Below are positions 8,350-47,000 of a stretch of 57,997 nucleotides of DNA, one piece after another (positions within the stretch are counted from its first letter, which is position 1; each line of letters begins with the position of its first letter). Source of the DNA: Macrostomum lignano (Eukaryota); the NCBI GenBank assembly GCA_002269645.1, contig NIVC01003434.1:1-57997 (forward strand), given 5' to 3'. The position numbers and the translations under genes were made by a program. The notes beneath the pieces were generated by a model that was not told where the DNA came from, ran no database searches, and was given only the letters and a program-made list of their open reading frames with translations.

Positions 8350-12135
<3,786 letters not shown>

Positions 12136-12414
12136 GGCTGAGCCGGCTGTGGGTGAAAACTGCGAGATGTCTTGTCCGCTCTCCTGCAGTAGGGGGATTT
12201 TTTCCCATTTGCTAACTGAATATGGAGCAGAGGAGCTGAAATTGCAGGTGGGGGCAACGGTGGGCCAAGCGAGCCAATGCGGTGCGGCTGGAATCTCTGG
12301 GACTGGCGTGCGGTCTGGGGATTTCTTTGAGGGCCAACTTTCAGGCTGGCCCTCGGATGATTCCACAGCAATAACAAAACCAATTACATGTTGAATCACT
12401 GTTTTAGAATTTAC

Positions 12415-18289: not shown

Positions 18290-21200
18290 TCACTGCTGCT
18301 CAATAGCCGGCTGCTGTTGCTGTTGCTGCTGCAGACTGCTGCATCTGTAGATGTAGATCCGGTAGTCTTTACTAGCCAGCACAATAGACCCGTCGTCAAG
18401 CAGGTCGATGTCGAAGCACTGGGCGTGCTTAATCCTCGACTCCAGAGCCTGCACTAGCTGGCCCTGCGGGTTGAACACTGTCACATTGAAGTTGTTATGA
18501 TTGTCCGCCACCACTATGTTGCCGTCGGACCGGACCGCCACACCGATAGGGTAGTTGGTGACCCCGCTCATGCCGATCTGGCCCAGGTACACTCCGTGGT
18601 AATTAAATACTCGAATGCAGTGGGCTCGGTTGTCGCTGATGTAAATCCTATAGTTGCCATCCACAGCAATGCTGTTGGGGAACTGCAGCCGGCTGCACTT
18701 GAAAGTCTTCAGAACAACTCCGCTGGAGTCGAAAATCACCACGCGCATTATCTTGCACTCGATGCAGATCACCCGCCCGTCCCGGTCGACGCACACGCCG
18801 CGCGGATGCTGCAGCACATCCGAGCCGAACTTGCGAATGAATTCGCCGAGGCGGGTGTACACCTGCGCAAGTTTGGAGTCAGGTATGGCCAGGCTTATCG
18901 TTACTGGCTGCGCGTAATCAGTGTCTACCCTGCTATCCCCTCAGTGTCTACCCTGCTATCCCCTCAGTGACTACCCTGCTATCCCCTCAGTGTCTACCCT
19001 GCTATCCCCTCAGTGTCTACCCTGCTATCCCCTCAGTGTCTACCCTGCTATCCCCTCAGTGTCTACCCTGCTATCCCCTCAGTGTTTGACCTGCTATTAC
19101 GTCAGTTTCTGCCCTGCTACCCCCAGTGCCGTTCAATCAGCGCTCACCTGAACCTGATGCGTAGGCGAGCGCTCCGTGACCACAATATTGCCGGTGGCTC
19201 GGTGCACAGCCACCCTATTAGGATAGGTGAACTGGCCCTCCCGCCGGCCGTTCTCGCCAAAGTGGAAGCGCAGCTGGCCAGTGACGCTGAACACCTGAAT
19301 CCGGTGATTGTTTGTGTCCGCCACGATTATCTCCTGCTGGGCGTTCACGGCCACGCCGCTGGGCTCCGTGAACTGGCCGTCAGTGAGGCCGAACTCTCCG
19401 AATTTCCTGCCGGTAAGAGGAAAAAAAGCATTTGCTTAAACACTTGTGGGGAAGCAGGGAGAGAAGGAAAGACAGGAAGGAGTGAGGGGGGCATACATGC
19501 TCAACCTCCAAAATTCAGTCGGCCGTGCGACTTAGTTTTAACAAAGAATGCGACGTAGTTTTTGGCCAAAGATGCGACTTACATGTAAAAGAAATCCTAA
19601 AGCAAAATAAACGCTACTTTGGGTAAACGGCAGGAGTAACAATGACTGTCTTATTGAGGCACAATCGCTCGTTAGCTACTTAGTTATACTTGGTATTTAT
19701 TCAGGTGGGCATTTTTGCGACTTACCTTGGTTGGCCGCCAAATCGGTCGGCCAGATTGGCCGACTGTTGCGCATGTATGGAGGGGGGAGGGAAGGAGTGA
19801 GGAGGGAAGGAGTGAGGGCGGGAATGAAGGGGTGAGAGCGGGAGGGAAGGAGTGAGGGCGGGAAGGAAGGAAAAACCACTCACATGTGGTACTGAATCCT
19901 GGCCCTAGCAACCAGCGGAGCGGACGGCGAGGTGCCGCCGCCGATGTGCGACCGAAGCAGAGCCTCGGCCAGCTGCAAATCGATAATGCCGCCGCCTCCG
20001 CCACCGCCAGCAGCTTGGCCAATCAGCAGCTGCTGCTGTTGCTGCTGCTGAGGCTGCTGCTCTACCAGGCTCTGCTCCACCGAGCCTGGCGACACCGCCG
20101 AAGGCAAGTCCGCAACCGCGGCGCCGCCATTCATCGCAGCTGGGCCGCCGCAGTCGCCGCCGTGGGACCAGTAGACAGCGCCGCCACTGCCGCCTCGGCT
20201 CTTTTGCCTCTGCCGCTGCTGCTTTTGCTGCTCCTCTGCTGCTAGTAGAAGCGGAACCGAATTCTCCTTGTCTGTGCAGCCGGACTGCACCGGCCAGCCG
20301 GTGAGAGAGGCCGAGGCAGCGGCAGCGGCCGGAATCGCAGAGTCTTCGACGACAGCCGCTGTCTGCGAGCGCTGCTGCTGCGGCTGCGGGTGCTGCTGCT
20401 GGTGATGGCGACCTTCGCCGATAGCACCAAGGGGGTTGCCCGGACGGCCAGAGGCGGTGGATGCAGCGACGGCCTTAATTGGGAGGTAAATTGGGGCAGC
20501 ATAGCAATATCCTATAGGATAGCAATAGCAATGTTCTGAGGAAATCCTCCTCACACAGATAATCTTTCTTCTCACACCGATAATCTTCCTTCTCACACTG
20601 ATAATCTTCCTTCTCACACTGATAATCTTCCTTCTCACACCGATAATCTTCCTTCTCACACTGATAATCTTCCTTTCACACCATATAATCTTCTTCTCAC
20701 ACAGATAATCTTCCTTCTCACACCGATAATCTTCCTTCTCACACTGATAATCTTCCTTTCACACCATATAATCTTCTCTACTCAAACAGATAATCTGAGC
20801 AGAATGATTACAGCGCCACTAGTCACCTGTACCTGGTCGGGTCCAACAACGCTGCCCATGAGGCCCAGGGCGTGAGCCACAATGGACGGCGGCGGCAGGT
20901 AGGTGATGCACTGGGCCGGGTCGCGGTCCAGCTCCGGGTAGCGGTGCTGCAGCACGGCGTCCAGCGACGGCTCCAAAGCGGCGTGCAGCATCGTCCTCTC
21001 GGCCGGGGCGGAGTGGGGGCCACAGTGCGCGTGCATCAGGGTGTAGTGCCTGGCCAGCAGCTGCATATCCTGACGCAGTTGGCGCCTGGAGCGCTGTAGT
21101 CCCGCGCCATAGTCAGCGGCACATTTGTTGAGCTCCTGGGTGAGCTGCTGACGACGGTCTGCGATGGCGGCCTGTGGGATTCATCGGAAATATTCCATCT

Positions 21201-23544
21201 CACTATTATATGGATCCCACTCACGATAGGTACATCCCAATCCTCAATAGACATATCCCCACTCCTCACTAGATACATCCCATTCCTCACTAGATACATC
21301 CCATTCCTCACTAGATACATCCCACTCCTCACTAGATACATCCCACTCCTCACTAGATATATCCCACTCCTCACTAGATATATCCCACTCCTCACTAGAT
21401 ACATGTACATCCCACTCCTCACTAGATACATCCCACTCCTCACTAGATACATCCCATTCCTCACTAGATACATCCCACTCCTCACTAGATACATCCCACT
21501 CCTCACTAGATACATCCCACTCCTCACTAGATACATCCCACTCCTCACTAGATACATCCCACTCCTCACTAGATACATCCCACTCCTCACTAGATATAAC
21601 CCCAATACTCACTAGATATATCCCACTCTTCACTGGATAATACCCTATTCCTCAGTCGCACAGCAGCAGGAGTCCCACCTGATAATCCTGATAGCTGCGT
21701 TCGATCCGCTCGGCCACCAGTCGGCAAGACTCGGCCAACTTGGCCTCCCACTCTGGCAAGGTGTCCAGGGCTCGCTGTACCCAGTCTAGGCGGGTCTTGG
21801 CAGCGTGGCCGGCCGTCTCTAGCAGGGCGGCTTCGCGCTGCAGCATCGCCTGCGTCAGCTGCTTGATGGGGTGGCCGCGGTGCTCGCCGGCCAGGCACTC
21901 GTCGCAAACCGGCCGGGCGCAGTGAGCGCAGAAGAATGTCAGCGACTAACGGAAGGATTGGCAGATAGAATAGCGAGACTGACATGGCAGGAGAGACTGA
22001 TATAACTAAGACGTGAGATTGACATGGGAAGAGGTGAGATTGACATGGGAACTGGCGAGATTGATATGGGAACTGGCGAGATTGATATGGGAATAGGTGA
22101 GATTGACATGGGAACTGGCGAGATTGATATGGGAACTGGCGAGATTGATATGGGAATAGGTGAGATTAACATGGGAACTGGCGAGATTGATATGGGAACT
22201 GGCGAGATTGATATGGGAACTGGCGAGATTGATATGGGCATAGGTGAGATTAACATGGGAACTGGCGAGATTGATATGGGAACTGGCGAGATTGACATGG
22301 GAATAGGTGAGATTAACATGGGAACTGGCGAGATTGATATGGGAACTGGCGAGATTGATATGGGAATAGGTGAGATTGACATGGGAACTGGCGAGATTGA
22401 TATGGGAACTGGCGAGATTGATATGGGAATAGGTGAGATTGACATGGGAACTGGCGAGATTGATATGGGAACTGGCGAGATTGATATGGGAATAGGTGAG
22501 ATTAACATGGGAACTGGCGAGATTGATATGGAAACTGGCGAGATTGATATGGGAACTGGCGAGATTGATATGGGAATAGGTGAGATTAACATGGGAACTG
22601 GTGAGATTGATATGGAAACTGTGAGATTGATATGGGAACTGTGAGATTGATATGGGAATAGATGGGAATAGGTGAGACTGACATGGAAAGAGGTGAGATT
22701 GATGTGAAGATATGAGACTGATATGGGAACTGGCGAGATTAATATGGGAAGAGGTGAGATTGACATGGTAATAGGTGAGATTGACATGGTAATAGGTGAG
22801 ATTGAGATGGGAAGAGGTGAGATTGACATGAAAAGAGGTGAGATTAACATGGGAACTGGCGAGATTGACTGAGAAGCAAAGTGGAATGGACTCAAGCCAT
22901 GCTCAACCAGACATCATTGACCCCCAACTTACCTGCTGCCGGTGCTCGCTGCAGGGCACGGCTGGCTGCCCATCGGGAGCCGAAGACCCAGGCGCCAGTC
23001 CCAGGTAGCGCTCACCAGCAAAATTGCACAGCAGTTTAGCGACGGGCACCTCCTGGGCGTCCGGGCAACGCCGACAGCGATAGGCCGCGCCGCCGGACAG
23101 GATGTCCACAGCCAGGCCGGACTCCAGGCACCTGTCGCAGTAGTGATGGCCGCACGGCAGAATCCGGGTCCGCCTGCGGAGACCGCAATGGCCGCAGCTG
23201 ACGGCCCAGCGGAGCATCTCCTCCGGGCTGCAGCAGGCTGCCAGACCGTCGGCGTCGTCGACAGCGGCTTCTTCGGCGTCGGACTGCGGCGCAGGCGTCG
23301 GCGAGTAGGTGAACCCGGATGCCAGGGCGTTGGCCGGAGCGGCGGCAGTGGCGCGGGAACTGGCGGGACTGCAGCTGGCGGTGGTGACGCCGGCGCGGCC
23401 GCTGCCGCCGCTGTTGCTGTCGACGCTGCTGCCGCTGCCGTGGCCGACACCGATAGTCAGCATCGGGCTAGGCGTCATCGGGCCGATGGCGGTGACCGAG
23501 TACGGGCGACTCTGAGCTTCCTGGAATGCCGGCGAGTACACGGG
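18290..23544 (-). CDS. brat: Brain tumor (brat/ncl-1) family TRIM-NHL protein: RING-like, B-box, coiled coil, low-complexity linker, NHL repeats
   Basis: Phase-consistent exons 23544(or 23520)-22933, 21945-21679, 21171-20833, 20473-19884, 19406-19148, 18862-18290. NHL text KFGEFG..DGQFTEPSGVAVNAQ.EIIVADTNNHRIQ...YPNRVAV...TERSPTHQ.Q...LQHPRGV.VD...DNRAHC...TNYPIGV...DNHNNFN...KHAQCFD...LASKDYRIYIY closely matches Brat as I recall it. B-box CSEHRQQSLTFFCAHCARPVCDECLAGEHRGH is reconstructed across intron 1. Confidence 0.92.
18920..19085. repeat. 23-bp intronic minisatellite (CAGTGTCTACCCTGCTATCCCCT)
   Basis: Tandem copies in the last brat intron. Confidence 0.9.
20548..20778. repeat. 21-bp intronic minisatellite (ACACTGATAATCTTCCTTCTC)
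   Basis: Tandem copies between brat exons. Confidence 0.9.
21250..21625. repeat. 21-bp intronic minisatellite (CACTAGATACATCCCACTCCT)
   Basis: Tandem copies between brat exons. Confidence 0.9.
22012..22870. repeat. 21-bp intronic minisatellite (GAGATTGATATGGGAACTGGC)
   Basis: About 40 copies with a higher-order variant pattern; lies in the intron that splits the B-box. Confidence 0.95.
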
Positions 23545-25166: not shown

Positions 25167-26510
25167 CTTGTCAGCCAAGGCGGACGCGTCCGAGCCCAGA
25201 CAGGTGAGTAGCGAGCCGTCAGTCACCTGAGTTTAGGAATAAGCAAAGGTGTAGCTTGCATTATTTTGTCAAAAATCTGCGACTTTAGACAGTGGCGATA
25301 AACTAAAGGATTGGAGGAGGGACTTTGTAGCACCAACTGAAGGATTGAGGGAGGGGCATTGTGGCGCCAACTGAAGGATTGAGGGAGGGGCATTGCGGCA
25401 CCAACTGAAGGATTGAGGGAGGGGCATTGTGGCACCAACTGAAGGATTGAGGGAGGGGCATTGCGGCACCAACTGAAAGATTGGGGAGGGGCATTGTGGC
25501 ACCAACTGAAGGATTGAGGGAGGGGCATTGTGGCGCCAACTGAAGGATTGAGGGAGGGCATTGTGGCGCCAACTGAAGGATTGAGGGAGGGGCATTGTGG
25601 CGCCAACTGAAGGATTGAGGGAGGGGCATTGTGGCACCAACTGAAGGATTGAGGGAGGGGCATTGCGGCACCAACTGAAAGATTGGGGGAGGGGCATTGT
25701 GGCACCAACTGAAGGATTGAGGGGCATTGTGGCGCCAACTGGGATTGAGGGAGGGGCATTGTGGCGCCAACTGAAGGATTGAGGGAGGGGCATTGTGGCA
25801 CCAACTGAAGGATTGAGGGAGGGGCATTGTGGCGCCAACTGAAGGATTGAGGGAGGCACCAACTGAAGGATTGAGGGAGGCACCAACTGAAGGATTGAGG
25901 GAGGCACCAACTGAAGGATTGAGGGAGGCACCAACTGAAGGATTGAGGGAGGCACCAACTGAAGGATTGAGGGAGGCACCAACTAAAGGATTGAGGGAGG
26001 GGCATTGTGGCGCCAACTGAAGGATTGAGGGAGGGCATTGTGGCGCCAACTGAAGGATTGAGGGAGGCACCAACTGAAGGATTGAGGGAGGCACCAACTG
26101 AAGGATTGAGGGAGGCACCAACTGAAGGATTGAGGGAGGCACCAACTGAAGGATTGAGGGAGGCACCAACTGAAGGATTGAGGGAGGCACCAACTGAAGG
26201 ATTGAGGGAGGCACCAACTGAAGGATTGAGGGAGGCACCAACTGAAGGATTGAGGGAGGCACCAACTGAAGGATTGAGGGAGGCACCAACTGAAGGCCCA
26301 AGGTATCAGGGACCGTCAATTGCTTTAATTACCCAGAAGCACTGAACTGCTCACCCTTCGATTCTTGCAGGGAATCTGGCCACCGTCGCAAGCTGCCGGC
26401 GCCTCATCATCCCATTCGCTGACGCTGGCAGCAGACTTTGGCGCGGTCGCCACAGCTGCTGCTCCCTTTCGTCGGATTCGACCCTTGAAGTAGCTCCAAG
26501 TGGACTTCAT
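25167..26510 (-). CDS. Two upstream coding exons (26510-26355 and 25226-25167) of the brat locus
   Basis: ATG at 26510 MKSTWSYFKGRIRRK...CKNRR|GTGAGC; 60-nt exon CTCAG|VTDGSLLTCLGSDASALADK|GTAAGC. Both phase 0 and in frame with either 24560 or 23544. Confidence 0.6.
25330..26295. repeat. 24/34-bp intronic minisatellite (GCACCAACTGAAGGATTGAGGGAG +/- GGGCATTGTG)
   Basis: Blocks of 34-bp and 24-bp variants. Confidence 0.95.
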
Positions 26511-27199
26511 TCTATTCACAAGTCTTTCAAAACCGTAGCTCCGTGTTCTGCTTCAGTGATCGACTGTGCACTTAAGACTCAGTATTGTCTGCTTTATGCT
26601 TTAACCGGCTCCATGCTCACATACAGACAACCAATGCTCTGCTGACATTGCAGTCCCAGGCCGCATGAGCTGCGGGGGTTTCTCTCTCTCTCTCTCTCAA
26701 ACCGATACTTTGAGACGAATTTAGCAGATCGCCGTGGCTGAGCAGTTAGGGAAAATCGATAAATTTAGCTAGCCAGAGACAGTGGTCTCATAACTATGGG
26801 CAAAACGGAAACTCACTATTCTCAGAAATCGATTAAAATTCACTCGAACAGCAGCAACTGGACATTGGTTGACTGAACTTGCACCGGCTTAGCCAGTACT
26901 CTCTAGTGTCTGTAAATAGCCTGTTTTGCATACTGGTAACCTGGTAACAGTGGTAAGCACATGTGGAAGGAGGGCATAGATAAAAGATGCAATATGCTAA
27001 CATAATAATCCCTCAATTATCACATAAATAAACACTGTGACATGAGCACAGATTGCATATGATATTATATATTGTACATGAGCACACCATGCAACAATTA
27101 CATTACAACTAACTATATGAAGACTCATTGAGATGGAATTCACTCATAACCCTACAACTATCACAGTATCTAGATCTAGGAACTTGGAAATTCTACCAG

Positions 27200-27950
27200 A
27201 TGCTTATAGCCTTATCCTACTTGCTTGTTAAACACAGCTCAAGGCCAGAACCAGATTATCGCTATAATAGTTGCATACACTCCTCAACTTTGCCAGGTAT
27301 ATGAGCAACATTGCTTACCATTCAGATCCATGCATTTACTGAAATTAGCATTTTGGGCAAGCAATTTACATCAACAATGAAGTCATAGGCTGGCACTAGG
27401 GACTAAAGCAGAAAGTGGAGCACACTTACCTGACTGACACTTTATTCCCTGTTGAGCTCTTGCACCAAGAGGCACTATTAGTGCTAATCTATGCTTTTTT
27501 AGTTGGCTGAGGAGCTAAGACTTAGGGCATGAGATTAGATTTGCATGGGTGCTGGCATATTCTGGCCTGCTAAGGAACAAGGCAGCCAATATAGCTAGTA
27601 AAGCCAATCAACTTCCCTAAAAGGATGTCAAAATCATTGTAAGAGTGATCTGTACTATAGACTATAGACACTACAGACTAACTCTAAGCTATATCACAAG
27701 AGTACCAATAGAAGAGGCAATAGAGGAAGCAAGGCTACGTTTAGTTCCAGAGCTAAAGCTATTAGCTTTTACCACTTAATATCTAGGCATTCCCTGGAGC
27801 TTGCATCTCTGTGCCCTATTTGCAAGATCAATGAGGCCTTAGAGAGATGCAGACATTGCAATGAGAAGGCAGAAACTATTGAGCATATTTGCTATTGTGT
27901 AGTAACCTTTTAGGCTAGAGCCAGACATGCCATTATGGAGCTATTTAATA
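27200..27950 (+). mobile_element. Heavily C-to-T mutated non-LTR retrotransposon fossil (RNase H plus C-terminal zinc knuckle)
   Basis: 27546-27605 reads WVLAYSGLLRNKAANIASKA versus the RNase H motif WVPAHSG.PGNE.AD..AK.A. About 27848-27900 reads CRHCNEKAETIEHICYC, like the LINE C..C....ET..H....C motif. Confidence 0.6.
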
Positions 27951-28399
27951 TTTAGACTAATAAATAGGGCACTGGCATTTAGGTCCTAGTTTAAAGAATA
28001 TTTACCCTTAAGCTCTGATGGATGAACTTGGCAACAACAATAATAACAAGCAATAGCAGCAATAATTGAACTAAGAATAGGCCTAATATATAAATCATTT
28101 TATGAAGTAAATAACTAATATTTTGTTGCTTTTATAGCATAATGTTTATTTTAGATTTTAAATTCTATTTTTTATTTCCAACAGCAATTATATAATTATA
28201 CTACAGTTTCATAGTCACTTTTTGAGCTTTTGTCTTTACTTGTTTGATTAATAGATGATAAAATGATAACAAAACTCATTGAATACATTTGGCTTTATGG
28301 GTAGATAACAAAGTGATTAACTAAATAATAGATAACAAATTTTTCAGATAACAAAGTGGCAAATGACAGTGTCTAAGAACTCAGAACTACAATAAAAGC

Positions 28400-28930
28400 A
28401 ATAGGCCTATCTATAATTAAAGGGAAGAAATTACAAATATATATTCTTATTCAACTAACATGTTTTGCTTAGGCAATGGCTAGAGTTCTGGCACCAGAAC
28501 CCATTTGGCCATTTTCTAACTGCTATAGATCTGGCAGTGGTATTCCAGTAGTGTAATTTATGGGTAGGCCTATAATATAGCAGAAACATTTTACTTTTTA
28601 ATGGGTGGTTTGTATTGAGATTTTGTTCAAGATAAGATCAAAATGAAATGATAAGATTCAAATCAAGATACTTCTATGTTTAAGACTTCATTAGTAGATA
28701 ATTGCCTGCAGAAGATTGCTGGATCCATAGCCATTAGAAAATGGGTTCCAGTGCCAGAAATCTAGCCATTACTAGGCCTAGGCCTATTTTGTTTAAGCAT
28801 CTTTAAGTTGTTGAAAATTTTACTTAGCATTTATCAAAATTGTAATAGTGTATAGCCTAAAGTTAGGCAAAACATGTCATTTGAATAAGAAAAAATGCTC
28901 CAGATTTCTTTCTATTAATCCTTATCAAGC
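28400..28930. mobile_element. Degenerate foldback/MITE with diverged inverted arms
   Basis: AATGGCTAGAGTTCTGGCACCAGAACCCATTT (~28475) matches the reverse complement of ~28735-28770; TTCTTATTCAACTAACATGTTTTGC (~28444) matches the reverse complement of ~28866-28890. Confidence 0.55.
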
Positions 28931-29239
28931 AAAGCATGTTGTTCTGCCAGAATATCTATAATTGCCTAATTTTTTGAAATTCTATACTAACTATACCTAT
29001 AATCCATGGCATACCTGCCTGCCATATAGAATATTTATCAAGGAAACCAACTTCATAGAATTGTAGACATAGGCCCTTTAGGCTTTAGCTTGTTTTAAAT
29101 GTTGGTGCATAAAAATAAGTTTAAAGTCACAGTCATACTAGTCATAGTTATAGTCACTCACTCAGTCACTGTCATTATAAATATTTTATATACTCTATAG
29201 GCTACTGAGTTTAACTTTAAGTCAAGTCAAGATGCCAAT

Positions 29240-30244
29240 CGACATCGAGTCAATGTCCAATGAATGAAACTGGAAAGTAAAACACAAACTAGGCTAGGCC
29301 TAGGCCTAGTGACATTAACATTACTTTAAATATAAAAGTGAAAATTCTAAGTGATTACTGATTGGGTACTTCGAAACACTCTCCAAGAGCTACAAAAATC
29401 AAGATCAGATATCATCAGATAATAAAAATTTTGTTGATGACTTTGACTTATCGTTTTATGGGAGAGACAATTGCGGGGTGATTGCGGCGGCGGATCGATC
29501 GAGAACTATCATTACTCAGACTCAGACTATTCTATCAAATTAGTCAATAAAGGCTTTGTCAAAAACAATAATTAAATGATCTGTTTCATCTGAAACAACT
29601 AAGCATTTATCTTGCAGTAGTAGGTCTAACATTTGTTATTTCCGTCTCACGAAGCCACGTGCAGCAATTTTAGGGGTGATTCTCATCGAGAGGTTTCGGA
29701 GGTTTTGAGGTTTTTCAGAGGTTTCATTTTGAACAAATATTTTTGCACAAAATTTTAATATTTTAGATTTATTTCTACATTACCGAGGCGACCGGTATAC
29801 GGCTCGGCTCGGCTTAGCTAAAAATCTGAAGTAATTTACTTATATTTATAAGATAAATGAAAGGAAAGGTAAATGAATTCAATTTCTATGCAATTTTCAT
29901 TTCTGTCAGTGTGTTAATGTCGAAGCAAGGGAACGCAAAGACTTACTAGGTATCAGTTCATTAAGAACCTCAATAGGCGATCTTCCAGTTTGTTTCGATA
30001 TTATTTTCAAGTTTCGATATTCGATATTCGATATTTTTTCAAGTTTGAATCGTTACCACAACATAGTGCCTCTAAACACTAGATAGAGCAGTTGATAGAG
30101 AAGTATAAATGGAGCAGTAGCTAGAGTGGTAGATAGAGCGATAGGGCCGTAAAAGTAGTGATAGATGGAGCAGTAGATAGAGCAATAGATATAGTAGTAG
30201 ATAGAACTAGAGCATTTTCTAATACCATTTCCCATCCATTTTCG
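29240..30244. promoter_or_regulatory. CpG-retaining island, probable divergent promoter for the brat locus (-) and SLC52 (+)
   Basis: About 1 kb with dozens of CpGs between two CpG-free domains, centred between head-to-head genes; Inr-like TCAGTT near 29953. TSS not determinable from sequence. Confidence 0.55.
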
Positions 30245-31439
30245 CCACAGATATCATTTTCTACCATGACACTATATATTGTGGCACCAATTCAAATATA
30301 AATATCTAGGCCTATTGTAGTATTGACATTTATAATGCCAATTTCAATATAAAATCTAGATATCAACATAGACATCATAAAAAATTATTGCTATGATATC
30401 AATTTTTAGGTAATAAAGCTTTCTATTTATATCAATTTTCATAAACTAGTAGGTGCCTATCTATAGAGTATAGCTAAAGCCTAAAACTTATAGCTCAGCT
30501 AGCTAGGTTTATACTTTTTATTACTTTGGTATCAAAAGAATGGTAAGGCAACCAGAAATTTGTTGAGGGTGGGCAGATTTTAGAGGGTAAAGACCAAAAA
30601 GGGTAGAAAAAGAGTGGCTCTATATTTTGGTAAGTTTGCTTGGTCTCCCCTTTGATTTTTTTCAGGTCTTTGCCTATAAGTTTAACTATCTAAATTCTAT
30701 CCCCATGGTTGTACCACTGCAAAAGAAGTAAAAGAGTTCTAGTAATAGTTGAAAACTACTTGCTATTAGACCTCTATAGTCTAAACCATAACTTTCATAT
30801 ATGATTATTATATATCTCATTTTATATTAAAGTTTCTATTTAAGCATATTGCATTCCAATCAAAAGTTTGATTTAACTTTTTATAGCTATATTTATATCA
30901 ACTACATTTAAGTCAAATGGTAATATGAAAGGACTTGATAAAAAGTTAATGTGGTTTGATGAACATTAAGCCAAGGCCTATATTCTTCTAATCTAAATAT
31001 AGGAAAAAATGACATTAGTCCAGCATTAGCCAGTTTTATGTATTTTATTTTTTAAGTATAGTATCTCTTATCTTTTACTTTTAGATTTCTTAATCTCTAA
31101 GGTTCTTAAGCTAGTATGCTATTTTTTTAGACTAGGCTATTATCCTATTAGAACAATGTAGTCTAAGGTTCAACCACACTTTTGAAAGCTTTTATCTAGA
31201 TGTTAGGTATTATATTGCACTTAAAGTCAAATTTTGAGGTGTTATTTTTTTAATTTGAATAATATTACATAAAAAGAATTAAACTTTTTACCTAGGATTT
31301 GATTTTAAAGCTATAATGTTAAATGTTTGTCTAAAAGTTCAAGGCATTATTTGGACAATTCTGATGTCAATGGAATCCCTTTGTATAAAGCCTAGTCTTT
31401 AGGCTAGATTATGACTTCCAAAGCCTTTAGGCTAGGTCA

Positions 31440-31870
31440 CTATACTTCTAGACCCTTAGGCCATTGCCATTCTCCTAGACCCTTAGACTAGGCCATTGTC
31501 ACCCCCACAGACCCTTTAGACTAGGCCATTGTCACTCTCCTAGATCCTTAGGCTGGGCCATTGTCACCCTCCCAGATCCTCAGAGTAGGTTATTGTCACC
31601 CTCCTAGATCCTCAGACCTGGCCATTGTCACTCTCTCAGATCCTCAGACCAGACCATTGTCACTCTCTCAGATCCTCAGACCAGGCCATTGTCACCCTCC
31701 TAGATCCTCAGACCAGGCCATTGTCACCCTCTCAGATCCTCAGACCAGGCCATTGTCACCCTCTCAGATCCTCAGACCAGGCCATTGTCACCCTCTCAGA
31801 TCCTCAGACCAGGCCATTGTCACCCTCTCAGATCCTCAGACCAGGCCATTGTCACCCTCCCTGATCCTCA
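31440..31870. repeat. 32-bp minisatellite (CTCAGACCAGGCCATTGTCACCCTCTCAGATC) with a leftward decay gradient
   Basis: Near-perfect copies on the right; CAG-to-TAG variants accumulate on the left. Confidence 0.9.
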
Positions 31871-31995
31871 GGTTGAGCCACCTGATGAATTCAATTTTTG
31901 TTAGTAATCAGAGATGATTTTGGCATGCGGCTGCTCAATTCCCCAAATTCGACTCGGACTGACAGGAGCCAAAAGCGCCAGCCAGCAGACAGTCC

Positions 31996-34900
31996 ATGTC
32001 GCTGCCGTCCATGTCTGAGCGGCCTGAGGCGCCTCCTTCACCGCGCCCAGCTCCACCGCGTCTGTCAATGCTGGCCTGCTTTCTAATTGGCAGCTTCGCC
32101 CTGGGCTCCTGGATCGACATCAATGGCGTGTTCAACCAGCTGCCGCTGATGGTGAAGAGCCTGCCGGAGGGCTGGTCGCTGCCGTCCTACCTGGCCGTGA
32201 TTGTGCAGCTGGGCAACATCGGCCCGGCCGCCTTCCTGTTGGCCAGCCGGCTTAGCCGCGGCAAATTCACTGACCGGGCAGGCGTGTTCGTCATCAATGC
32301 GACTGGCGCCGTGGCTTTGCTTGTGCTCGCCTTCGTCTGGCCAATCACCATCGACGGTCGCAGCCTTCCACTCATGCTGGTAGTGCTGACCCTGTCCCTG
32401 GTAGACTGCTCCTCCTCTGTTGTCTATCTCAGCTACATGTCCGCCTATCCCACCGCGTATCTGAGCGCCCTGTACGTTGGCGAAGGAGTTGGCGGACTGA
32501 TCCCAGGGCTGCTGGCATTGATACAGGTGAGTCCATTGACTGGGTCTTGCCGTGATGGTCTGAGTGAGAGCGGAGAGGTAGATTCAAGAACTGGGAGAGA
32601 GCGGAGAGGCAGATTCGGGGATTGGGGAAAGCGGAGAGGCAGATTCAAGAACTGGGGAAAGCGGAGAGGCAGATTCAAGCACTGGGAGAGAGCGGAGAGG
32701 TAGATTCGGGGATTGGGGAGAGCGGAGAGGCAGATTCAAGCACTGGGGAGAGTGGAGAGGCAGATTAAGGGATTGGGGAGAGCGGAGAGGCAGATTCGAG
32801 AACTGGGGAGAGCGGAGAGGCAGATTAAGGGATTGGGGAGAGCGGAGAGGCAGATTCAAGCACTGGGGAGAGAGCGGAGAGGCAGATTCAAGCGCTGAGG
32901 GAGAGCGGAGATGCAGATTCAAGCGCTGAGGCAGAGCGGAGAGGCAGATTCAAGCGCTGAGGCAGAGCGGAGAGGCAGATTCAAGCGCTGAGGGAGAGCG
33001 GAGAGGCAGATTCAAGCGCTGAGGGAGAGCGGAGAGGCAGATTCAAGCGCTGAGGCAGAGCGGAGAGGCAGTATCAAGTTTGCTAACAGGAAATTTGCTA
33101 GCCGAAGCTTGCTAGTAGCTGTCAGTGGCAGTACGAGCTATATATTTATACTCGTACGAATCAAAGCGGCTGATTAACTTGTCGATATGAAAACAAACAG
33201 CAAATAAGAGAACAAGGCAGCAAATTCGGCTAGCAGATTTCGGCAGGCAAATTTCTCGCTAATAAACTTAGGCTAGCAAATCTCATACTATCTGCAGATT
33301 CAAGTGCGTCAGTATGAGCCTCATAAGTTTATGTATCCAAAAAAGCATTCCACGTGAAGTATTTGGTGTGCTTGATGCTAAGAAAAATTACTGTATTCTA
33401 ATGCTTCGCACTTCGCAGCTTATAGAAAGCGGACTGCAGGTCAATCGGCACTGCTATTATGCAGCACTCAGCGGTTAAAGATAAGAATCGCTACAGTCTG
33501 CTGGCCTTGCTGTACAATGAAAAGTCATTTGGTCATTGTATTTAGTCAAGCTTTTTCTTGTAGGCCATAAATATGTTGGCGAAAGTGCGCAGTTCAACGG
33601 CTAAGAACCAAGGCCCCATCGGCATAAGCCATGGCGCACAGGTGCGGCAGCGTATAAGTGCCGCCTTATCGTTATCGAACAGTAATTACTACAAAAAATT
33701 TCAACACAATGAACACACGAAATTGCAATTATATTTTCGATGAAAGCAGAAACTGAGGGTAGGCACCTTCGCTCGCTTTTTGGTTGGTGGGTCTACTTAA
33801 CTAAATCAACTCCTTCTCACACTGCTCAATATTGCTACTTAGAGTAGGCTACTTTGCACTCTACTTCTCATCCTACCTACTCATACCTAGGTTTCTAATT
33901 TCTATGCATATCGGTGCTTAAAAGATAAGCTTGTCTTAAGCTTGTATTGCTCAGGAAACTTTTCTGCCGATATGTATCGAAAAAACAGTTTTTTGATACT
34001 TGCATATTAAAAAGGCCTTTACAAAGTTACCATAAATAGTCCAGAACCGACTGGGTGATAAACTGCTTCAATGTTGAAGCATTAGAACGCCGATATTTTC
34101 TTAGAAAGCCGACCTATTTATCATTCCCAGGGCTCGGGCGGCGCCCCAGAGTGCATCAACGGCACGCATCCGGAGTACGCGCCGCCCCGCTACTCTGTGG
34201 GCGCATTCTACGGCCTGCTGTGCGGCATGCTCTGCTACAGCCTGCTGGCCTTCTGGCTGCTCACCGCCTGGCCGTTTAAGCTGGCTAATAGGCCGCCATT
34301 GAAGACTGAGCAGCAGATGGCCGCCTCCGGAGCCCAGGTGGGTGGCCTATCTCAAGTTTATTCGGCGTTTAGACAATGAAAAGTAGGAGGATGAGAAACT
34401 ACTGAGGAGAACTTTATAATATCAGAAACATTTTCCCGAGTTTTTTCCGGGTACATCACGAACCGAAGTAATTTCCGGTTGAGCTACCGGATGTAGTAGA
34501 CCCTGCGGTAATTTGACTCCAAGACTGTGCTTGCAGCGATTCAACCCCCCCCCCATTCAGGTATCCCCTCAGCCCGATGCCAGCCATCGCAACACCCGGA
34601 CGAGACCACCAGCCTTCGGCAGCCTCGCCGAAGCGGCAGCGCACCCAATCGCGCCTTCCTGCTCTGCCTGGTGGCCCTGCTGAACGCCTGGGGCACCGGC
34701 CTGCTGCCCTCGTTGCAGTCCTACTCTGCCCTGCCATACGGCTACAGCGCCTACCACCTGGCCGTGACCCTGGCCAACCTGGCCAACCCCCTGGCCTGCT
34801 TTGCCACCTTTGCCTGGCGGGCCCGGACTGCCCGCAGCCTGCTGGCTCTGGTGGCCGCCGGCTGTCTGGCCAGCGGCTACGTCACCACGCTGGCCGCTAT

Positions 34901-38699: not shown

Positions 38700-38950
38700 T
38701 GCAAAAAAGTCATACTACTGGGCAGTACCACTCGGCGCGGATGATGTGGTCTGCCAGCTGATGTCGCCGACGGCGACGCAACAAGTCGCTTGGAGAAGGG
38801 CCAGGCCGGCGCCATACAGCACCACATTTATCGCTCGCTCGCTCGTCCGTCAGCGTCCAGGTCTCGGCGTAGAGTAGAGCAAGCCGCATTGAAATGCCCC
38901 ATGACAGAGCGGCAGTCTCCAACAGTCAGCAAATGAACGATTGCTTAGTG
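38700..38950 (-). mobile_element. RTE-clade LINE reverse transcriptase C-terminal fragment
   Basis: LLYAETWTLT and RRRRHQLADHIIRAE..CP resemble RTE motifs LLYG.ETWTL and RRRRL..AGH..R. It appears to continue beyond the hAT insertion at about 40200-40330. Confidence 0.5.
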
Positions 38951-41299: not shown

Positions 41300-42300
41300 C
41301 ATTTACTGTCAGTAGAGTGAGTTGCTCTTACATTCACTTGCTCTTTCGCGCGTAGCCTCACGACGGTCTCTAAAGGTGAACGCGAAAATGTGGTGATTCT
41401 TACCTGAGTTATTAAATTTCTTTGCTTAGATTTGAAAGTAAAACTCAGGTAAAGTTGCTCGCTTGGCAAGTAAGATTGGCAAGTAAGACGGAATGAGAGG
41501 CTTGATGGGGGAATCCAGATACTTGGCCAGCTCATATTCAGCGGTGTTAATCATAGACGATTGGTCTAAGAGGTTTTCAGGTTTATGAACCTTACAGAAC
41601 CCCGTAAAGCTCATGGATAAAAGCACTTACCAGCACATCCTGCCCAGTGGGAGCCAACTTGGTCAGCTCTACGGGGTCTGTGAGGTTCATAAACCTGAAA
41701 AACCTCTGGTCATCTTTCGTTCTGCTAAGGTTGACAACTTTGTCGGTCGGTTGAAGTCACGTGTTCCCTGTGCTCTTCGTGCTGGTGTCGTTTATCAGTT
41801 CAACTGCTCTGATGACCAGAGCGTCTCCTACGTGGGGAAGACAAAAAGGCACCTGCACACTAGAATCAGGGAGCACTGGCTGAAACCGTCGGCTATCCAA
41901 AACCATCTCTTAGAGTGTAATTGTTGCTCCAACTGCAAACCCGAAGAGCGCTTCAAAGTCGTTGCTCAATGCTCATTTGACTCCAAACTCCAGATACTTG
42001 AAGCGCTGTAGATTAAAGCGCATTCCCCCAACCTCAACACTCAACTCCAACACAGTGGCGCGGGACATGTTCTCCGTGTGTTCTGAGGGAGGGGACACTG
42101 GATGTACATTATATACTTCTAACTATATCGCTATCATTCCGTCCCTGGACTTTGCCTCTCGACTTTTGGACCAACAAACCTGTACTTCAAATATTATTTA
42201 TTTACTGCCGATCACACTCGTTTCTTTCGCTCAAAAATAAACCTGAAGATGCACAGTATCGTGCGAAACGCGTCGTTAAATTAAATTTATTTATTGTTGA
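41300..42300 (+). mobile_element. Rearranged Penelope-like element (RT fragments, GIY-YIG endonuclease, pLTR)
   Basis: Plus strand YQHILPSGSQLGQLYG...VHKPE joined to GVVYQFNC...SYVGKTKRHLHTRIREH...SAIQNHL...LEAL*IK...P.LNTQL. Minus strand 41626-41430 KVHKPE...SMINTAEYELAKYLD..IKPLIP is the next RT segment, inverted. Confidence 0.85.
42234..42280 (+). ncRNA. Minimal type I hammerhead ribozyme in the PLE 3' region
   Basis: CTGAAGA (42243-49), stem II GCAC/GTGC, GAAA (42265-68), palindromic ACGCGT helix III, GTC cleavage triplet ending at 42274, short stem I AAC/GTT. Confidence 0.75.
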
Positions 42301-43579: not shown

Positions 43580-43950
43580 TGATTGAGATTGGGATTCGAG
43601 TTTATCGGGGTGGGGATTCGAGTTTATTGGGGTGGGGATTCAAGTTTATTGGGGTGGGGATTCAAGTCTATTGGGGTGGGGATTCGAGTCTATTGGGGTG
43701 GGGATTCAAGTCTATTGGGGTGGGGATTTGAGTTTATCGGGGTGGGGATTCGAGTTTATTGGGGTGGGGATTCAAGTCTATCGGGGTGGGGATTCAAGTC
43801 TATTGGGGTGGGGATTCGAGTTTATTGGGGTGGGAATTCAAGTCTATTGGGGTGGGGATTCGAGTCTATTGGGGTGGGGATTTGAGTTTATTGGGGTGGG
43901 GATTCGAGTTTATCGGGGTGGGGATTCGAGTTTATTGGGGTGGGGATTAA
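43580..43950. repeat. 22-bp G-rich minisatellite (GGGGTGGGGATTCGAGTTTATT)
   Basis: About 17 copies with paired G4 tracts. Confidence 0.95.
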
Positions 43951-44234: not shown

Positions 44235-44520
44235 CCGTTCCTGATCCCGCATCCCGATCCCACATCCCAATCCCACATCCCGATCCCACATCCCAATCCC
44301 ACATCCCAATCCCACATCCCGATCCCGCATCCCGATCCCACATCCCAATCCCACATCCCGATCCCGCATCCCGATCCCACATCCCGATCCCACATCCCGA
44401 TCCCACATCCCGATCCCACATCCCGACCCCGCATCCCGGTCCCGCATCTCAATCCCACATCCCGATCCCACACCCCGATTGGGATCCCGATCTCGATTTC
44501 GCTTTCCGATCCAACGTCCC
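44235..44520. repeat. 6/12-bp C-rich repeat (ATCCCG/ATCCCAC)
   Basis: Imperfect tandem array; resumes at about 45708-45740 after an insertion. Confidence 0.9.
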
Positions 44521-44527
44521 CATCCCC

Positions 44528-45707
44528 GGGGGCATCACAAACGCGAAAAATCACAACTCGGAAAAGCGCTTTCCATCATAAACCCGAAATATCATAAACC
44601 CGAAATATCATAAACCCGAAATATAATAAACCCGAAATATCATAAACCCGAAATATCATAAACCCGAAATATAATAAACCCGAAATATCATAAACCCGAA
44701 ATATCATAAACCCGAAATATCATAAACCCGAAATATAATAAACCCGAAATATCACAAGCCCGAAATATCATAAACCCGAAATATCATAAACCCGAAATAT
44801 CATAAACCCGAAATATAATAAACCCGAAATATCACAAGCCCGAAATATCATAAACCCGAAATATAATAAACCCGAAATATCATAAACCCGAAATATCATA
44901 AACCCGAAATATTATAAACCCGAAATATAATAAACCCGAAATATAATAAACCCGAAATATCACAAACCCGAAATATCATAAACCCGAAATATCATAAACC
45001 CGAAATATTATAAACCCGAAATATCATAAACCCGAAATATCATAAACCCGAAATATCACAAGCCCGAAATATCATAAACCCGAAATATCATAAACCCGAA
45101 ATATCACAAGCCCAAAATATCATAAACCCGAAATATCATAAACCCGAAATATCATAAACCCGAAATATCACAAACCCGAAATATCATAAACCCGAAATAT
45201 CATAAACCCGAAATATCACAAGCCCGAAATATCATAAACCCGAAATATCATAAACCCGAAATATCATAAACCCGAAATATCATAAACCCGAAATATTATA
45301 AACCCGAAATATCATAAACCCGAAATATCATAAACCCGAAATATCATAAACCCGAAATATCATAAACCCGAAATATCATAAACCCGAAATATCATAGACC
45401 CGAAATATCATAAACCCGAAATATCATAAACCCGAAATATTATAAACCCGAAATATAATAAACCCGAAATATCATAAACCCGAAATATCATAAACCCGAA
45501 ATATCATAAACCCGAAATATCATAAACCCGAAATATCATAAACCCGAAATATCATAAACCCGAAATATCACAAGCCCGAAATATCATAACTCCGAAAGTT
45601 CTAGCAATGTCCAACACTATTTTGGTTTTCGAAGTTATGATATTTCGGGTTTGTGATGGGAAGTGCTTTCGGAGTTGTGATTTTTCGGGTTTATGATGGC
45701 GACCCCC
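44528..45707. mobile_element. Inverted-repeat element whose left arm expanded into a 16-bp satellite (TCATAAACCCGAAATA, ~44575-45590)
   Basis: Left arm CATCACAAACGCGAAAAATCACAACTCGGAAAAGCGCTTTCCATCATAAACCCGAAATATCATAA matches the reverse complement of 45625-45707; GGGGG/CCCCC termini. No clear TSD. Confidence 0.75.
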
Positions 45708-46089: not shown

Positions 46090-47000
46090 GTGGCGCCCCA
46101 AACATCTTTGGGCGCCTCCCTGTCCCATTTGACGCCTTTCTGTCCCATTTGGCGCCTTTCTGTCCCATTTGGCGCCTCCCTATCCTATTTGGCGCCTATC
46201 TGTCCCATTTGGCGCCTCTCTGTCCCAGTTGGCGCCTCCCTATCCTATTTGGCGCCTCTCTGTCCCATTTGGCGCCTCTCTGTCCCATTTGGCGCCTCCC
46301 TATCCTATTTGGCGCCTATCTGTCCCATTTGGCGCCTCTCTGTCCCAGTTGGCGCCTCTCTGTCCCAGTTGGCGCCTCCCTATCCTATTTGGCGCCTCTC
46401 TGTCCCATTTGGCGCCTCTCTGTCCCATTTGGCGCCTCCCTATCCTATTTGGCGCCTATCTGTCCCATTTGGCGCCTCTCTGTCCCATTTGGCGCCTCCC
46501 TATCCTATTTGGCGCCTATCTGTCCCATTTGGCGCCTCTCTGTCCCAGTTGGCGCCTCCCTATCCTATTTGACGCCTCTCTGTCCCATTTGGCGCCTTTC
46601 TGTCCCATTTAGCGCCTCCCTATCCTATTTGGCGCCTATCTGTCCCATTTGGCGCCTTCCTGTCTCATTTGGCGCCTTTCTATCCCATTTGGTGCCTCCC
46701 TATCCTATTTGGCACCTCCCTATCCTATTTGGCGCCTCTCTGTCCCATTTGGCGCCTCTCTGTCCTATTTGGCCCCTGCCTGTCCCACTTGACGCCTCTC
46801 TGTCCCATTTGGCGCCTCTCTGTCCTATTTGGCGCCTCTCTGTCCCATTTGGCGCCTCTCTGTCCCATTTGGCGCCTCTCTGTCCTATTTGGCGCCTGCC
46901 TGTCCCATTTGGCGCCTCTCTGTCCCATTTGGCGCTTCTCTGTCCCATTTGGCGCCCCCTATCCCATTTGGCGCCTTCCTGCCCCTTTTGGCGCCTCCCT
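46090..47000. repeat. 20-bp minisatellite (TGTCCCATTTGGCGCCTCTC / TATCCTATTTGGCGCCTCCC)
   Basis: About 45 copies with interleaved variants. Confidence 0.95.

What the first reader, a model, noticed from the sequence alone, without database searches (positions are those of the whole stretch)
26887..31927. Two CpG-free hypermutated domains symmetrically flanking a divergent promoter
Line-by-line reading finds only 2 CpGs in 26887-29239 (2353 bp; at 27260 and 27738) and none in 30245-31927 (1683 bp), where the base composition predicts dozens. The 1-kb island between keeps dozens, and CpGs return abruptly at the first coding exons on both sides. TpA and CTAG are conspicuously enriched. TEs, introns and even more AT-rich DNA elsewhere in the window keep CpGs, so the effect is positional (the first ~2 kb each side of a promoter), not repeat-wide or gene-body-wide. 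This points to long-term, locally targeted germline cytosine methylation or deamination in promoter-proximal 5' UTR introns or outrons, a pattern I do not recognise as described for this kind of genome.
Basis: partly seen in the sequence, partly recalled or inferred. Interest (0 to 1): 0.88.

Follow-up and report, generated by a model that had tools for sequence, protein, structure and literature searches.

The report
CpG-free spacer blocks between flatworm genes
Two AT-rich stretches in the 5.5-kb spacer between two head-to-head genes of the flatworm Macrostomum lignano have lost almost every CpG while a 1-kb piece between them kept them, which most likely marks patchy germline DNA methylation on repeat-rich DNA, not a new promoter-centred hypermutation system.

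Summary
Block 26887-29239 holds 2 CpGs against about 70 expected, and 30245-31927 holds none against about 51. The 1-kb piece between them has 32 (O/E 1.03). Among non-tandem 500-bp windows, none inside the blocks exceeds O/E 0.07 and none elsewhere falls below 0.32. The window is Macrostomum lignano, which keeps DNMT1 and DNMT3 and has low 5mC.

- About 414 bp of the right block is a 32-bp tandem array with a CpG-free unit.
- The left block holds a 500-bp foldback element. Its arms differ at two TG/CA dinucleotides, a footprint of CpG decay in place.
- There is no TpG/CpA excess, so "hypermutated" is not shown.
- No promoter could be shown in the island.
- Two other gene 5' ends in the window lack such blocks.
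- CpG loss is also patchy in tandem arrays far from this locus.

Best reading (confidence 0.45): patchy germline 5mC on repeat-rich spacer DNA, with an unmethylated or younger core. Copy number, bisulfite data and TSS maps would decide, but the M. lignano genome could not be reached with these tools. All eight TAGGCCTA palindromes of the window cluster here, unexplained.

The parts
26887..29239 (.). Left CpG-free block (2353 bp, 34% GC, 2 CpGs against 70 expected)
   Evidence: Trinucleotide signature shared with the right block: CTA/TAG, AGG/CCT and GCC/GGC are about 2x the control level.
26887..28075 (+). Possible decayed, 5'-truncated LINE 3' part. This is a motif-level lead only and is unconfirmed.
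   Evidence: The translations show three motif-like strings: 'QYANII' (YADD-like), 'FAWVLAYSGLLRNKAANIASKA' (like an RNase H C-terminal motif) and 'CRHCNEKAETIEHICYC' (like an ORF2 zinc knuckle). A (CAA/TAA)-like run follows at 28020-28075. All database tests were negative.
28416..28919 (.). Foldback or MITE-like inverted repeat, with arms at 28416-28536 and 28717-28919
   Evidence: pairs I1-I3, 75-91% complementary. The DNA hairpin has dG -73.4 kcal/mol and z -6.2. The arms differ at two TG/CA dinucleotides that restore CCGG.
28078..30314 (.). Cluster of all eight exact TAGGCCTA palindromes in the window
   Evidence: 8 found against 0.98 expected in 58 kb. The flanks are not homologous to each other.
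29240..30244 (.). Island that keeps its CpGs (32 CpGs, O/E 1.03, 35% GC). The core is 29372-30051 (O/E 1.29); the shores are 29240-29371 and 30052-30244 (O/E 0.44-0.50).
   Evidence: About half the CpGs sit in three small clusters or micro-repeats. No Rfam family matched and there is no ORF of 60 aa or more beyond chance.
30245..31457 (.). Right CpG-free block, non-tandem part (1213 bp, 29% GC, 0 CpGs against 25 expected)
   Evidence: There is no detectable relic of the adjacent 32-bp unit left of about 31428.
31458..31871 (.). 32-bp x 12.9 tandem array with a CpG-free unit (AGGCCATTGTCACCCTCTCAGATCCTCAGACC)
   Evidence: One column carries CA (7 units), TG (2) and TA (2) but never CG.
31895..31904 (+). 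Candidate 3' splice or trans-splice acceptor (tttttgttag), 92 nt before the SLC52 ATG and 24 nt before CpGs resume
   Evidence: Read from the sequence. This is an inference. 38.8% of M. lignano genes are trans-spliced (PMC5730564).
31996..32560 (+). Exon 1 of a riboflavin transporter (SLC52) gene
   Evidence: Pfam PF06237, E 3e-53.
26325..26510 (-). ATG-containing exon of the left gene. It is probably the 5' exon of the TRIM2/Brat-like RING-NHL gene at 18290-23541. Its upstream 26511-26886 keeps 15 CpGs (26534-26885).
   Evidence: The link to the TRIM gene is inferred.

Best explanation
The 5.5-kb spacer between the two head-to-head genes is made largely of old repeat-derived, AT-rich DNA: a foldback element, a minisatellite, and possibly a LINE remnant. 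This DNA has been a target of the sparse, patchy germline CpG methylation that M. lignano can perform with its retained DNMT1 and DNMT3.

Deamination of 5mC, without effective repair, has removed essentially all CpGs. It keeps removing new ones that arise from TpG/CpA. The 680-bp core of the 'island' escaped, either because it is kept unmethylated (a regulatory or promoter element) or because it is younger DNA.

On this reading the target is the repeat-rich spacer, not a position relative to a promoter.

Shown here: the CpG absence and its sharp limits, the repeat content of part of the blocks, the TG/CA footprint in the foldback, and patchy CpG loss in repeats elsewhere in the window.

Inferred: methylation as the cause, germline timing, and the status of the island.
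For: - CpG O/E is 0.00-0.03 inside the blocks, against at least 0.32 (median 0.87) in all other non-tandem DNA of the window.
- The organism is M. lignano. P0004 is identical to the window's NHL ORF apart from a 12-aa gap.
- The literature reports DNMT1 and DNMT3 retained and low 5mC in this species (PMC11292947, PMC9246332, PMC10658182).
- The foldback arms differ at two TG/CA dinucleotides, both restoring CCGG. There are no GT/AC control differences, and P is about 0.012.
- With about 450 TpG/CpA sites and no residual periodicity, neutral drift should have created many CpGs. This points to continuing removal (inference).
- CpG loss tracks repeats elsewhere in the window. 17 of 29 tandem-array consensus units lack CpG against 7.5 expected.
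- Arrays at 9073-9859, 43591-43948 and 44239-44479 show CpG transition variants 8-36x more frequent than non-CpG ones. Neighbouring arrays show none.
- The shores of the island have the flanks' composition and intermediate CpG O/E. This fits a graded epigenetic boundary better than an insertion edge.
Against: - There is no TpG/CpA excess in the right block (0.82/0.99), and in the left block only control-level values.
- O/E is far below the roughly 0.2 equilibrium of fully methylated mammalian DNA, so an unusually strong or unrepaired decay must be assumed.
- Most of both blocks has no proven repeat or TE identity. There is no similarity to each other or to the rest of the window, and every homology search for the LINE lead failed.
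- Other AT-rich DNA and a Penelope-like fragment keep their CpGs.
- The outer limits fall within 68-375 bp of the two start codons, as a positional model predicts.
- Variant counts in the arrays are not independent events, because unit amplification can copy one mutation many times.
- No methylation data were available.
Confidence: 0.45

Rival explanations
1. CpG-free by descent. The blocks are fairly recent copies of repeat families (MITE or foldback, LINE, decayed minisatellite) whose consensus already lacks CpG. Nothing special happens at this locus, and the island is simply different DNA.
For: A 414-bp array and many other arrays in the window have CpG-free units. More than half of the M. 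lignano genome is repetitive (PMC5730564). The two blocks share an unusual word usage, with TAG, AGG and GGC words about 2x the control level. The outer boundaries are sharp.
Against: No copy of either block exists elsewhere in the 58 kb, and no periodicity remains. The foldback arms carry TG/CA paired differences that imply ancestral CpGs lost after arm duplication. DNA diverged enough to have lost all repeat structure should have regained CpGs (inference).
Confidence: 0.2
2. A position-specific process methylates or deaminates cytosines in the first ~2 kb of 5' UTR intron or outron on each side of a bidirectional promoter lying in the island.
For: The layout is symmetric around a core that keeps its CpGs. 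CpGs resume 68 bp (right) and 375 bp (left) from the start codons. A plausible splice acceptor lies at 31895-31904. There is a weak mirrored AT skew, with T>A on the would-be sense strand on both sides (z 2.5 and -2.0). Trans-splicing is common in this species (PMC5730564).
Against: The Fox and LRR genes in the same window have no such blocks upstream. No TSS evidence exists. The left gene has its own proximal upstream region that keeps CpGs. GC skew is zero in both blocks. No decay-product excess is seen. Patchy CpG loss also occurs in arrays far from any 5' end.
Confidence: 0.12
3. A functional, selected domain. The spacer is a regulatory or architectural element, for example an insulator or enhancer cluster built on the TAGGCCTA palindrome, in which CpGs are avoided by selection or by protein binding, not lost through methylation.
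For: All eight TAGGCCTA sites of the window lie within 2.2 kb here against about 1 expected, and their flanks are not homologous.
Against: Selection against every CpG over 3.6 kb of otherwise unconstrained AT-rich DNA has no known precedent. The motif cluster covers only the inner half of the region (28078-30314). No binding factor is known (my knowledge).
Confidence: 0.08
4. Assembly or contamination artefact.
For: None found.
Against: The blocks are contiguous with two M. lignano genes on both sides. The composition changes occur within unique sequence. No N runs or junction signatures were seen.
Confidence: 0.02

Closest known systems
Vertebrate CpG islands (non-methylated islands) embedded in methylated, CpG-depleted DNA
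   Same: A ~1-kb segment with CpG O/E of about 1 is flanked by CpG-depleted DNA and lies between divergently oriented genes. Intermediate 'shores' are present.
   Different: The background genome here is not depleted (median O/E 0.87). The island is 35% GC, not GC-rich. Depletion is near-total (0-0.03) instead of about 0.2. A TSS in the island is unproven.
Repeat- or TE-targeted 5mC with CpG decay in invertebrates with mosaic methylomes (general knowledge; reviewed in PMC9246332, PMC11292947)
   Same: CpG loss is patchy and coincides with repeat DNA, both here and in some tandem arrays of the window. DNMT1 and DNMT3 are present in the species.
   Different: TE identity is unproven for most of the two blocks. 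Methylation patterns in free-living flatworms were called unknown in 2022 (PMC9246332). No methylation data were available here.
Fungal RIP and RIP-like CpG hypermutation of repeats
   Same: The blocks are AT-rich, have raised TpA, and have lost a C-containing dinucleotide almost completely, with sharp edges.
   Different: The RIP index (CpA+TpG)/(ApC+GpT) is 1.51 and 1.12, above the RIP threshold of 1.03. No duplicate partner is seen. RIP is not known in animals (my knowledge).
Minisatellite arrays with CpG-free units
   Same: 31458-31871 is exactly this, as are all other long CpG-free gaps in the window.
   Different: About 3.57 kb of the two blocks is non-tandem, with no residual periodicity.

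Membership tests
5mC-deamination (methylation footprint) domain | CpG O/E far below neighbouring DNA of the same composition | tested here: met
   0.00-0.03 against a median of 0.85 in AT-rich controls.
5mC-deamination (methylation footprint) domain | Excess of the decay products TpG and CpA | tested here: inconclusive
   Left block 1.11/1.27, the same as controls. Right block 0.82/0.99, which is no excess.
5mC-deamination (methylation footprint) domain | Related copies differ by TG/CA at the same dinucleotide (independent decay of an ancestral CpG) | tested here: met
   Two such sites in 116 aligned bases of the foldback arms, none of the GT/AC control type, P about 0.012. The sample is small.
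5mC-deamination (methylation footprint) domain | The organism has maintenance and de novo CpG methyltransferases, and 5mC is present on the domain | not testable with these tools
   The literature reports DNMT1 and DNMT3 retained and low 5mC in M. lignano (PMC11292947, PMC9246332, PMC10658182). No locus-level data exist, and the primary paper (Wasik 2015) is not held.
CpG-island / non-methylated-island promoter | At least 200 bp with CpG O/E of at least 0.6 | tested here: met
   1005 bp at O/E 1.03; core of 680 bp at 1.29.
CpG-island / non-methylated-island promoter | G+C of at least 50% | tested here: not met
   35% GC.
CpG-island / non-methylated-island promoter | Overlaps a transcription start site | not testable with these tools
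   No RAMPAGE, CAGE or RNA data were available. The scan tool on offer is for sigma-70 promoters only.
RIP-like repeat-induced hypermutation | TpA/ApT of at least 0.89 together with (CpA+TpG)/(ApC+GpT) of at most 1.03 | tested here: not met
   The first index is 1.04 and 1.17, but controls reach 0.79-1.00. The second index is 1.51 and 1.12.
RIP-like repeat-induced hypermutation | The targets are duplicated sequences | tested here: inconclusive
   No partner was found within the 58 kb.
Non-LTR retrotransposon (LINE) remnant, 26887-28075 | RT, RNase H or ORF2 C-terminal domain recognised by a profile or by homology | tested here: not met
   Pfam on 3 frames: none. 5.8-billion-protein search: none at E<=10. 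1.84-billion HMMER search: none. PDB: none relevant. Only motif resemblance recalled from memory remains.
Foldback / MITE-like element, 28416-28919 | Long inverted arms forming a stable hairpin | tested here: met
   Arms are 75-91% complementary. dG is -73.4 kcal/mol and z is -6.2.
Foldback / MITE-like element, 28416-28919 | Target-site duplication and multiple genomic copies | not tested
   The ends are ambiguous in AT-rich DNA, and the genome is not available.
Minisatellite with CpG-free unit, 31458-31871 | Head-to-tail copies of one unit that lacks CpG | tested here: met
   32 bp x 12.9 copies, 89% matches. 0 CpGs against 25.6 expected.

The most novel reading that the evidence does not exclude
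M. lignano, an animal with low global 5mC, builds vertebrate-like local architecture. A non-methylated, CpG-retaining bidirectional promoter sits inside a tightly bounded, heavily methylated domain that covers the outron or first intron on each side. CpG decay there (O/E at most 0.03) goes beyond the mammalian equilibrium, which would imply enzyme-driven or unrepaired deamination targeted by promoter-proximal transcription.
Probability: 0.1. Interest if true: 0.75.

Novelty: new member of a known kind. Interest (0 to 1): 0.42.

Why it matters
A 2022 review (PMC9246332) called the genome-wide methylation pattern of free-living flatworms unknown, although M. lignano keeps DNMT1 and DNMT3. Sharply bounded, completely CpG-free non-tandem blocks in a genome that otherwise keeps its CpGs would be a sequence-only map of where the germline or neoblast lineage has been methylated over evolutionary time.

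If such blocks prove common, they give a cheap way to find methylation targets in this regeneration model, whether these are repeats, spacers or promoter flanks. They would also allow a test of whether piRNA- or repeat-directed methylation exists in flatworms. The near-zero O/E also raises the question of whether 5mC deamination repair is weak in this lineage.

If the blocks are just copies of a CpG-free repeat family, the finding is ordinary.

Tried and rejected
- **Similarity between the blocks.** Self-BLAST and tblastx of both blocks and the island against each other and the rest of the window found nothing beyond the 32-bp array and the foldback. The two blocks are therefore not LTRs or TIRs of one element.
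- **RNA genes.** Rfam at gathering level on the whole window and at E<=1 on 26400-32100 gave nothing credible. There are no tRNAs. A search for the spliced-leader sequence, recalled from memory, found nothing.
- **LINE lead for 26887-28075.** All of these were negative: Pfam (an earlier attempt failed on stop codons), a frame-joined query against 5.8 billion proteins, an 81-aa ORF against 1.84 billion representatives, and three PDB searches. It is kept only as an unconfirmed lead.
- **Mitochondrial insert.** No long ORFs appear under flatworm or invertebrate mitochondrial codes outside the tandem array.
- **Right block as a decayed copy of the adjacent 32-bp array.** An nhmmer profile finds nothing left of about 31428.
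- **Composition model without CpG words.** A 4-mer likelihood scan trained on one block and tested on the other mostly tracked AT-richness and did not single out the blocks.
- **TG/CA against GT/AC column test across all arrays.** 8 against 6 sites, which is not informative.
- **M. lignano paralogous or orthologous loci.** P0004 has no contig on record. The SLC52 query found no close relative.
- **Wasik et al. 2015, the primary methylation data.** The paper is not held.
- **ATCGAT/DRE-like motifs as a promoter marker.** 11 sites are scattered over the window, which is not diagnostic.

Full report
**Observation**

- 26887-29239 (2353 bp, 34% GC) has two CpGs, at 27260 and 27738, against 69.7 expected.
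- 30245-31927 has none against 51.4 expected.
- The 1005 bp between them has 32 against 31.1 expected.

The two longest CpG-free gaps of the window are 1685 bp (30243-31928) and 1502 bp (27738-29240). Every other gap longer than 221 bp is a tandem array whose unit lacks CpG.

I compared 500-bp windows with less than 10% tandem repeat. The 269 outside the region never fall below O/E 0.32 (median 0.87). The 27 inside the blocks never exceed 0.07. Against the local AT-rich norm, the Poisson probabilities are 3e-23 for the left block and 5e-10 for the non-tandem right block. Against a mammal-like equilibrium of 0.2, the joint probability is still 1e-6.

There are four qualifications.
- 414 bp of the right block (31458-31871) is a 32-bp tandem array with a CpG-free unit. 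Only about 25 of the 51 'missing' CpGs on the right come from non-tandem DNA.
- CTAG is about 2.5-fold enriched. TpA is only mildly raised, at 1.05-1.07 against 0.72-0.97 in controls.
- On the left, CpGs resume 375 bp upstream of the start codon, not at the exon.
- The island has a 680-bp core (O/E 1.29) and two shores at O/E 0.44-0.50.

**Organism and genes**

The NHL ORF at 18290-18862 (minus strand) is identical to a UniRef Macrostomum lignano TRIM2 model, apart from a 12-residue gap in that model. The window is therefore M. lignano.

The genes, from Pfam and ORFs, are:
- a Fox gene (minus strand, 8454-12399);
- a RING-NHL TRIM2/Brat-like gene (minus strand, 18290-23541), with a probable ATG exon at 26325-26510;
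- an SLC52 riboflavin transporter (plus strand, from 31996);
- a GIY-YIG (Penelope-like) fragment (41613-42011);
- an LRR gene (plus strand, from about 48008);
- a FERM-like exon (minus strand, 52960-54060).

The finding occupies the 5.5-kb spacer between the head-to-head TRIM-like and SLC52 genes. About 26% of the window is tandem arrays. This fits the published description of the genome, in which more than half is repetitive and 15% is simple or tandem repeats (PMC5730564).

**Anatomy of the spacer**

The two blocks are not similar to each other or to anything else in the 58 kb, so they are not LTRs or TIRs of one element.

The left block contains a 500-bp foldback (arms 28416-28536 and 28717-28919, 75-91% complementary). 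It folds as a hairpin at z = -6.2.

The first 1.2 kb of the left block (26887-28075, plus strand) shows strings that resemble, from my memory of LINE ORF2 proteins, a YADD box, the RNase H C-terminal motif and the C-terminal zinc knuckle in the right order. A (CAA/TAA)-like tail follows. Every database test of this idea was negative, so it is a lead and not a result.

The right block ends in the 32-bp array. A profile of that unit finds nothing left of about 31428.

Both blocks share a word usage that differs from other AT-rich DNA of the window. TAG/CTA, AGG/CCT and GGC/GCC are about 2-fold up, and AAA and GAA are down. All eight exact TAGGCCTA palindromes of the window lie within 28078-30314 against about 1 expected. 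Their flanks are unrelated, so this is a short recurring motif and not a repeat unit. It remains unexplained.

The island matches no Rfam family and has no meaningful ORF. About half of its CpGs sit in three small clusters or micro-repeats.

**Is it hypermutation?**

The classical product signature is missing. TpG/CpA O/E is 1.11/1.27 in the left block, the same as controls, and 0.82/0.99 in the right block. RIP indices are not met.

One direct footprint does exist. The two arms of the foldback differ at two dinucleotides by TG against CA, both restoring CCGG. There are no differences of the GT/AC control type. Simulation gives P of about 0.012. CpGs were therefore present when the arms were duplicated, and were lost independently afterwards.

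The blocks hold about 450 TpG/CpA sites and have lost all repeat periodicity. I infer that neutral drift should have recreated tens of CpGs. Their absence implies continuing removal and not merely a CpG-free origin.

**Is it positional?**

The window offers two other 5' ends. The 2 kb upstream of the Fox gene and of the LRR gene keep their CpGs, with O/E 0.59-0.87.

The left gene has its own 375-bp upstream stretch that keeps CpGs and carries a (CT)n run. Its promoter need not be in the island. On the right, a plausible acceptor (tttttgttag, 31895-31904) lies just before CpGs resume. This is compatible with an outron, since 38.8% of genes are trans-spliced (PMC5730564).

GC skew is zero in both blocks. 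A weak mirrored AT skew exists, but a plus-strand LINE on the left would explain it equally well.

CpG loss is not confined to this locus. 17 of 29 tandem-array consensus units lack CpG against 7.5 expected from composition (P about 4e-6). Among arrays that still have a CpG, three (9073-9859, 43591-43948, 44239-44479) show CpG transition variants 8-36 times more frequent than non-CpG ones. Others, including the immediately adjacent 44575-45597, show none. One caveat applies: variants can be copied by unit amplification, so these are not independent events.

CpG decay in this genome therefore looks patchy and repeat-associated.

**Mechanism**

M. lignano retains DNMT1 and DNMT3 and has low overall 5mC (PMC11292947, PMC9246332, PMC10658182, all citing Wasik et al. 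2015, which I could not read).

The best-supported reading is sparse germline or neoblast-lineage CpG methylation aimed at repeat-rich DNA. This spacer is one long-standing target, and the island core is an unmethylated or younger segment. I give this a confidence of 0.45.

The rivals are:
- blocks that are CpG-free by descent, as copies of a CpG-free repeat family (0.2);
- a selected regulatory domain built on TAGGCCTA (0.08);
- an artefact (0.02).

**Comparison with known systems and novelty**

The layout works like a vertebrate non-methylated island in methylated DNA. It fails membership on GC content and on the genome-wide background, and a TSS is untested.

It resembles repeat-targeted methylation in mosaic invertebrate methylomes, and this is where I file it: a new member of a known kind. 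For free-living flatworms the pattern was called unknown in 2022 (PMC9246332), so a sequence footprint of it has some value. One locus without methylation, copy-number or TSS data does not, however, establish a new phenomenon.

The unusually complete loss (O/E at most 0.03) and the TAGGCCTA cluster are the two features that remain surprising.

**What would settle it**

The following would decide between the models:
- copy number of the blocks in the M. lignano assembly;
- CG-to-TG/CA differences against the duplicated copy of this locus;
- bisulfite or nanopore 5mC over 26000-32500;
- a genome-wide cross of non-tandem CpG-free runs with repeats, RAMPAGE signal and trans-splice sites.

None of these could be run, because no M. 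lignano genome sequence beyond this window was reachable.

Noticed in passing
window 28078-30314: All eight exact TAGGCCTA palindromes of the 58-kb window cluster here (about 1 expected). Two are doublets (TAGGCCTAGGCCTA). The flanks are not homologous to each other. Function unknown.
   Followed up: partly
window 28416-28919: A foldback or MITE-like inverted repeat that forms a ~500-nt hairpin (z -6.2). Its arms differ at two TG/CA dinucleotides that restore CCGG.
   Followed up: yes
whole window (29 tandem arrays, 26% of bases): 17 of 29 tandem-array consensus units contain no CpG, against 7.5 expected from unit composition (P about 4e-6). Arrays are either CpG-free or have normal CpG content.
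   Followed up: partly
window 9073-9859, 43591-43948, 44239-44479 versus 44575-45597, 46111-47021, 910-1392: CpG transition variants among repeat units are 8-36x more frequent than non-CpG transitions in the first three arrays. They are not raised in the last three, although 44239-44479 and 44575-45597 are only about 100 bp apart.
   Followed up: partly
window 44575-45597: A 16-bp array (ATCATAAACCCGAAAT x 64) gives the highest CpG O/E in the window (3.65), in 33% GC DNA. It is the opposite extreme to the finding.
   Followed up: no
window 10788-11653: An (ATCT)217 microsatellite, followed by a 16-bp array, lies inside the intron that splits the forkhead domain of the Fox gene.
   Followed up: no
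window 18290-18862 (minus strand): The UniRef M. lignano TRIM2 model (P0004) lacks 12 residues (VQALESRIKHAQ) that are present in the uninterrupted window ORF. This is probably a gene-model artefact.
   Followed up: no
window 41613-42011 and 38710-38922: A GIY-YIG (Penelope-like) ORF fragment, and a minus-strand ORF with a LINE-like 'RRRRHQLADHIIRAE' string. Both lie in DNA that keeps CpGs (O/E 0.8-1.1).
   Followed up: partly
window 29485-29500, 29784-29815, 29995-30035: About half of the island's CpGs lie in three small clusters or micro-repeats: GCGGCGGCGG/ATCGATCG, (CGGCT)3 and (TTCGATA)3.
   Followed up: no
window 31458-31871, unit junction column: One column of the 32-bp array carries CA (7 units), TG (2) and TA (2) but never CG. 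This is the pattern expected of a fully decayed CpG.
   Followed up: partly
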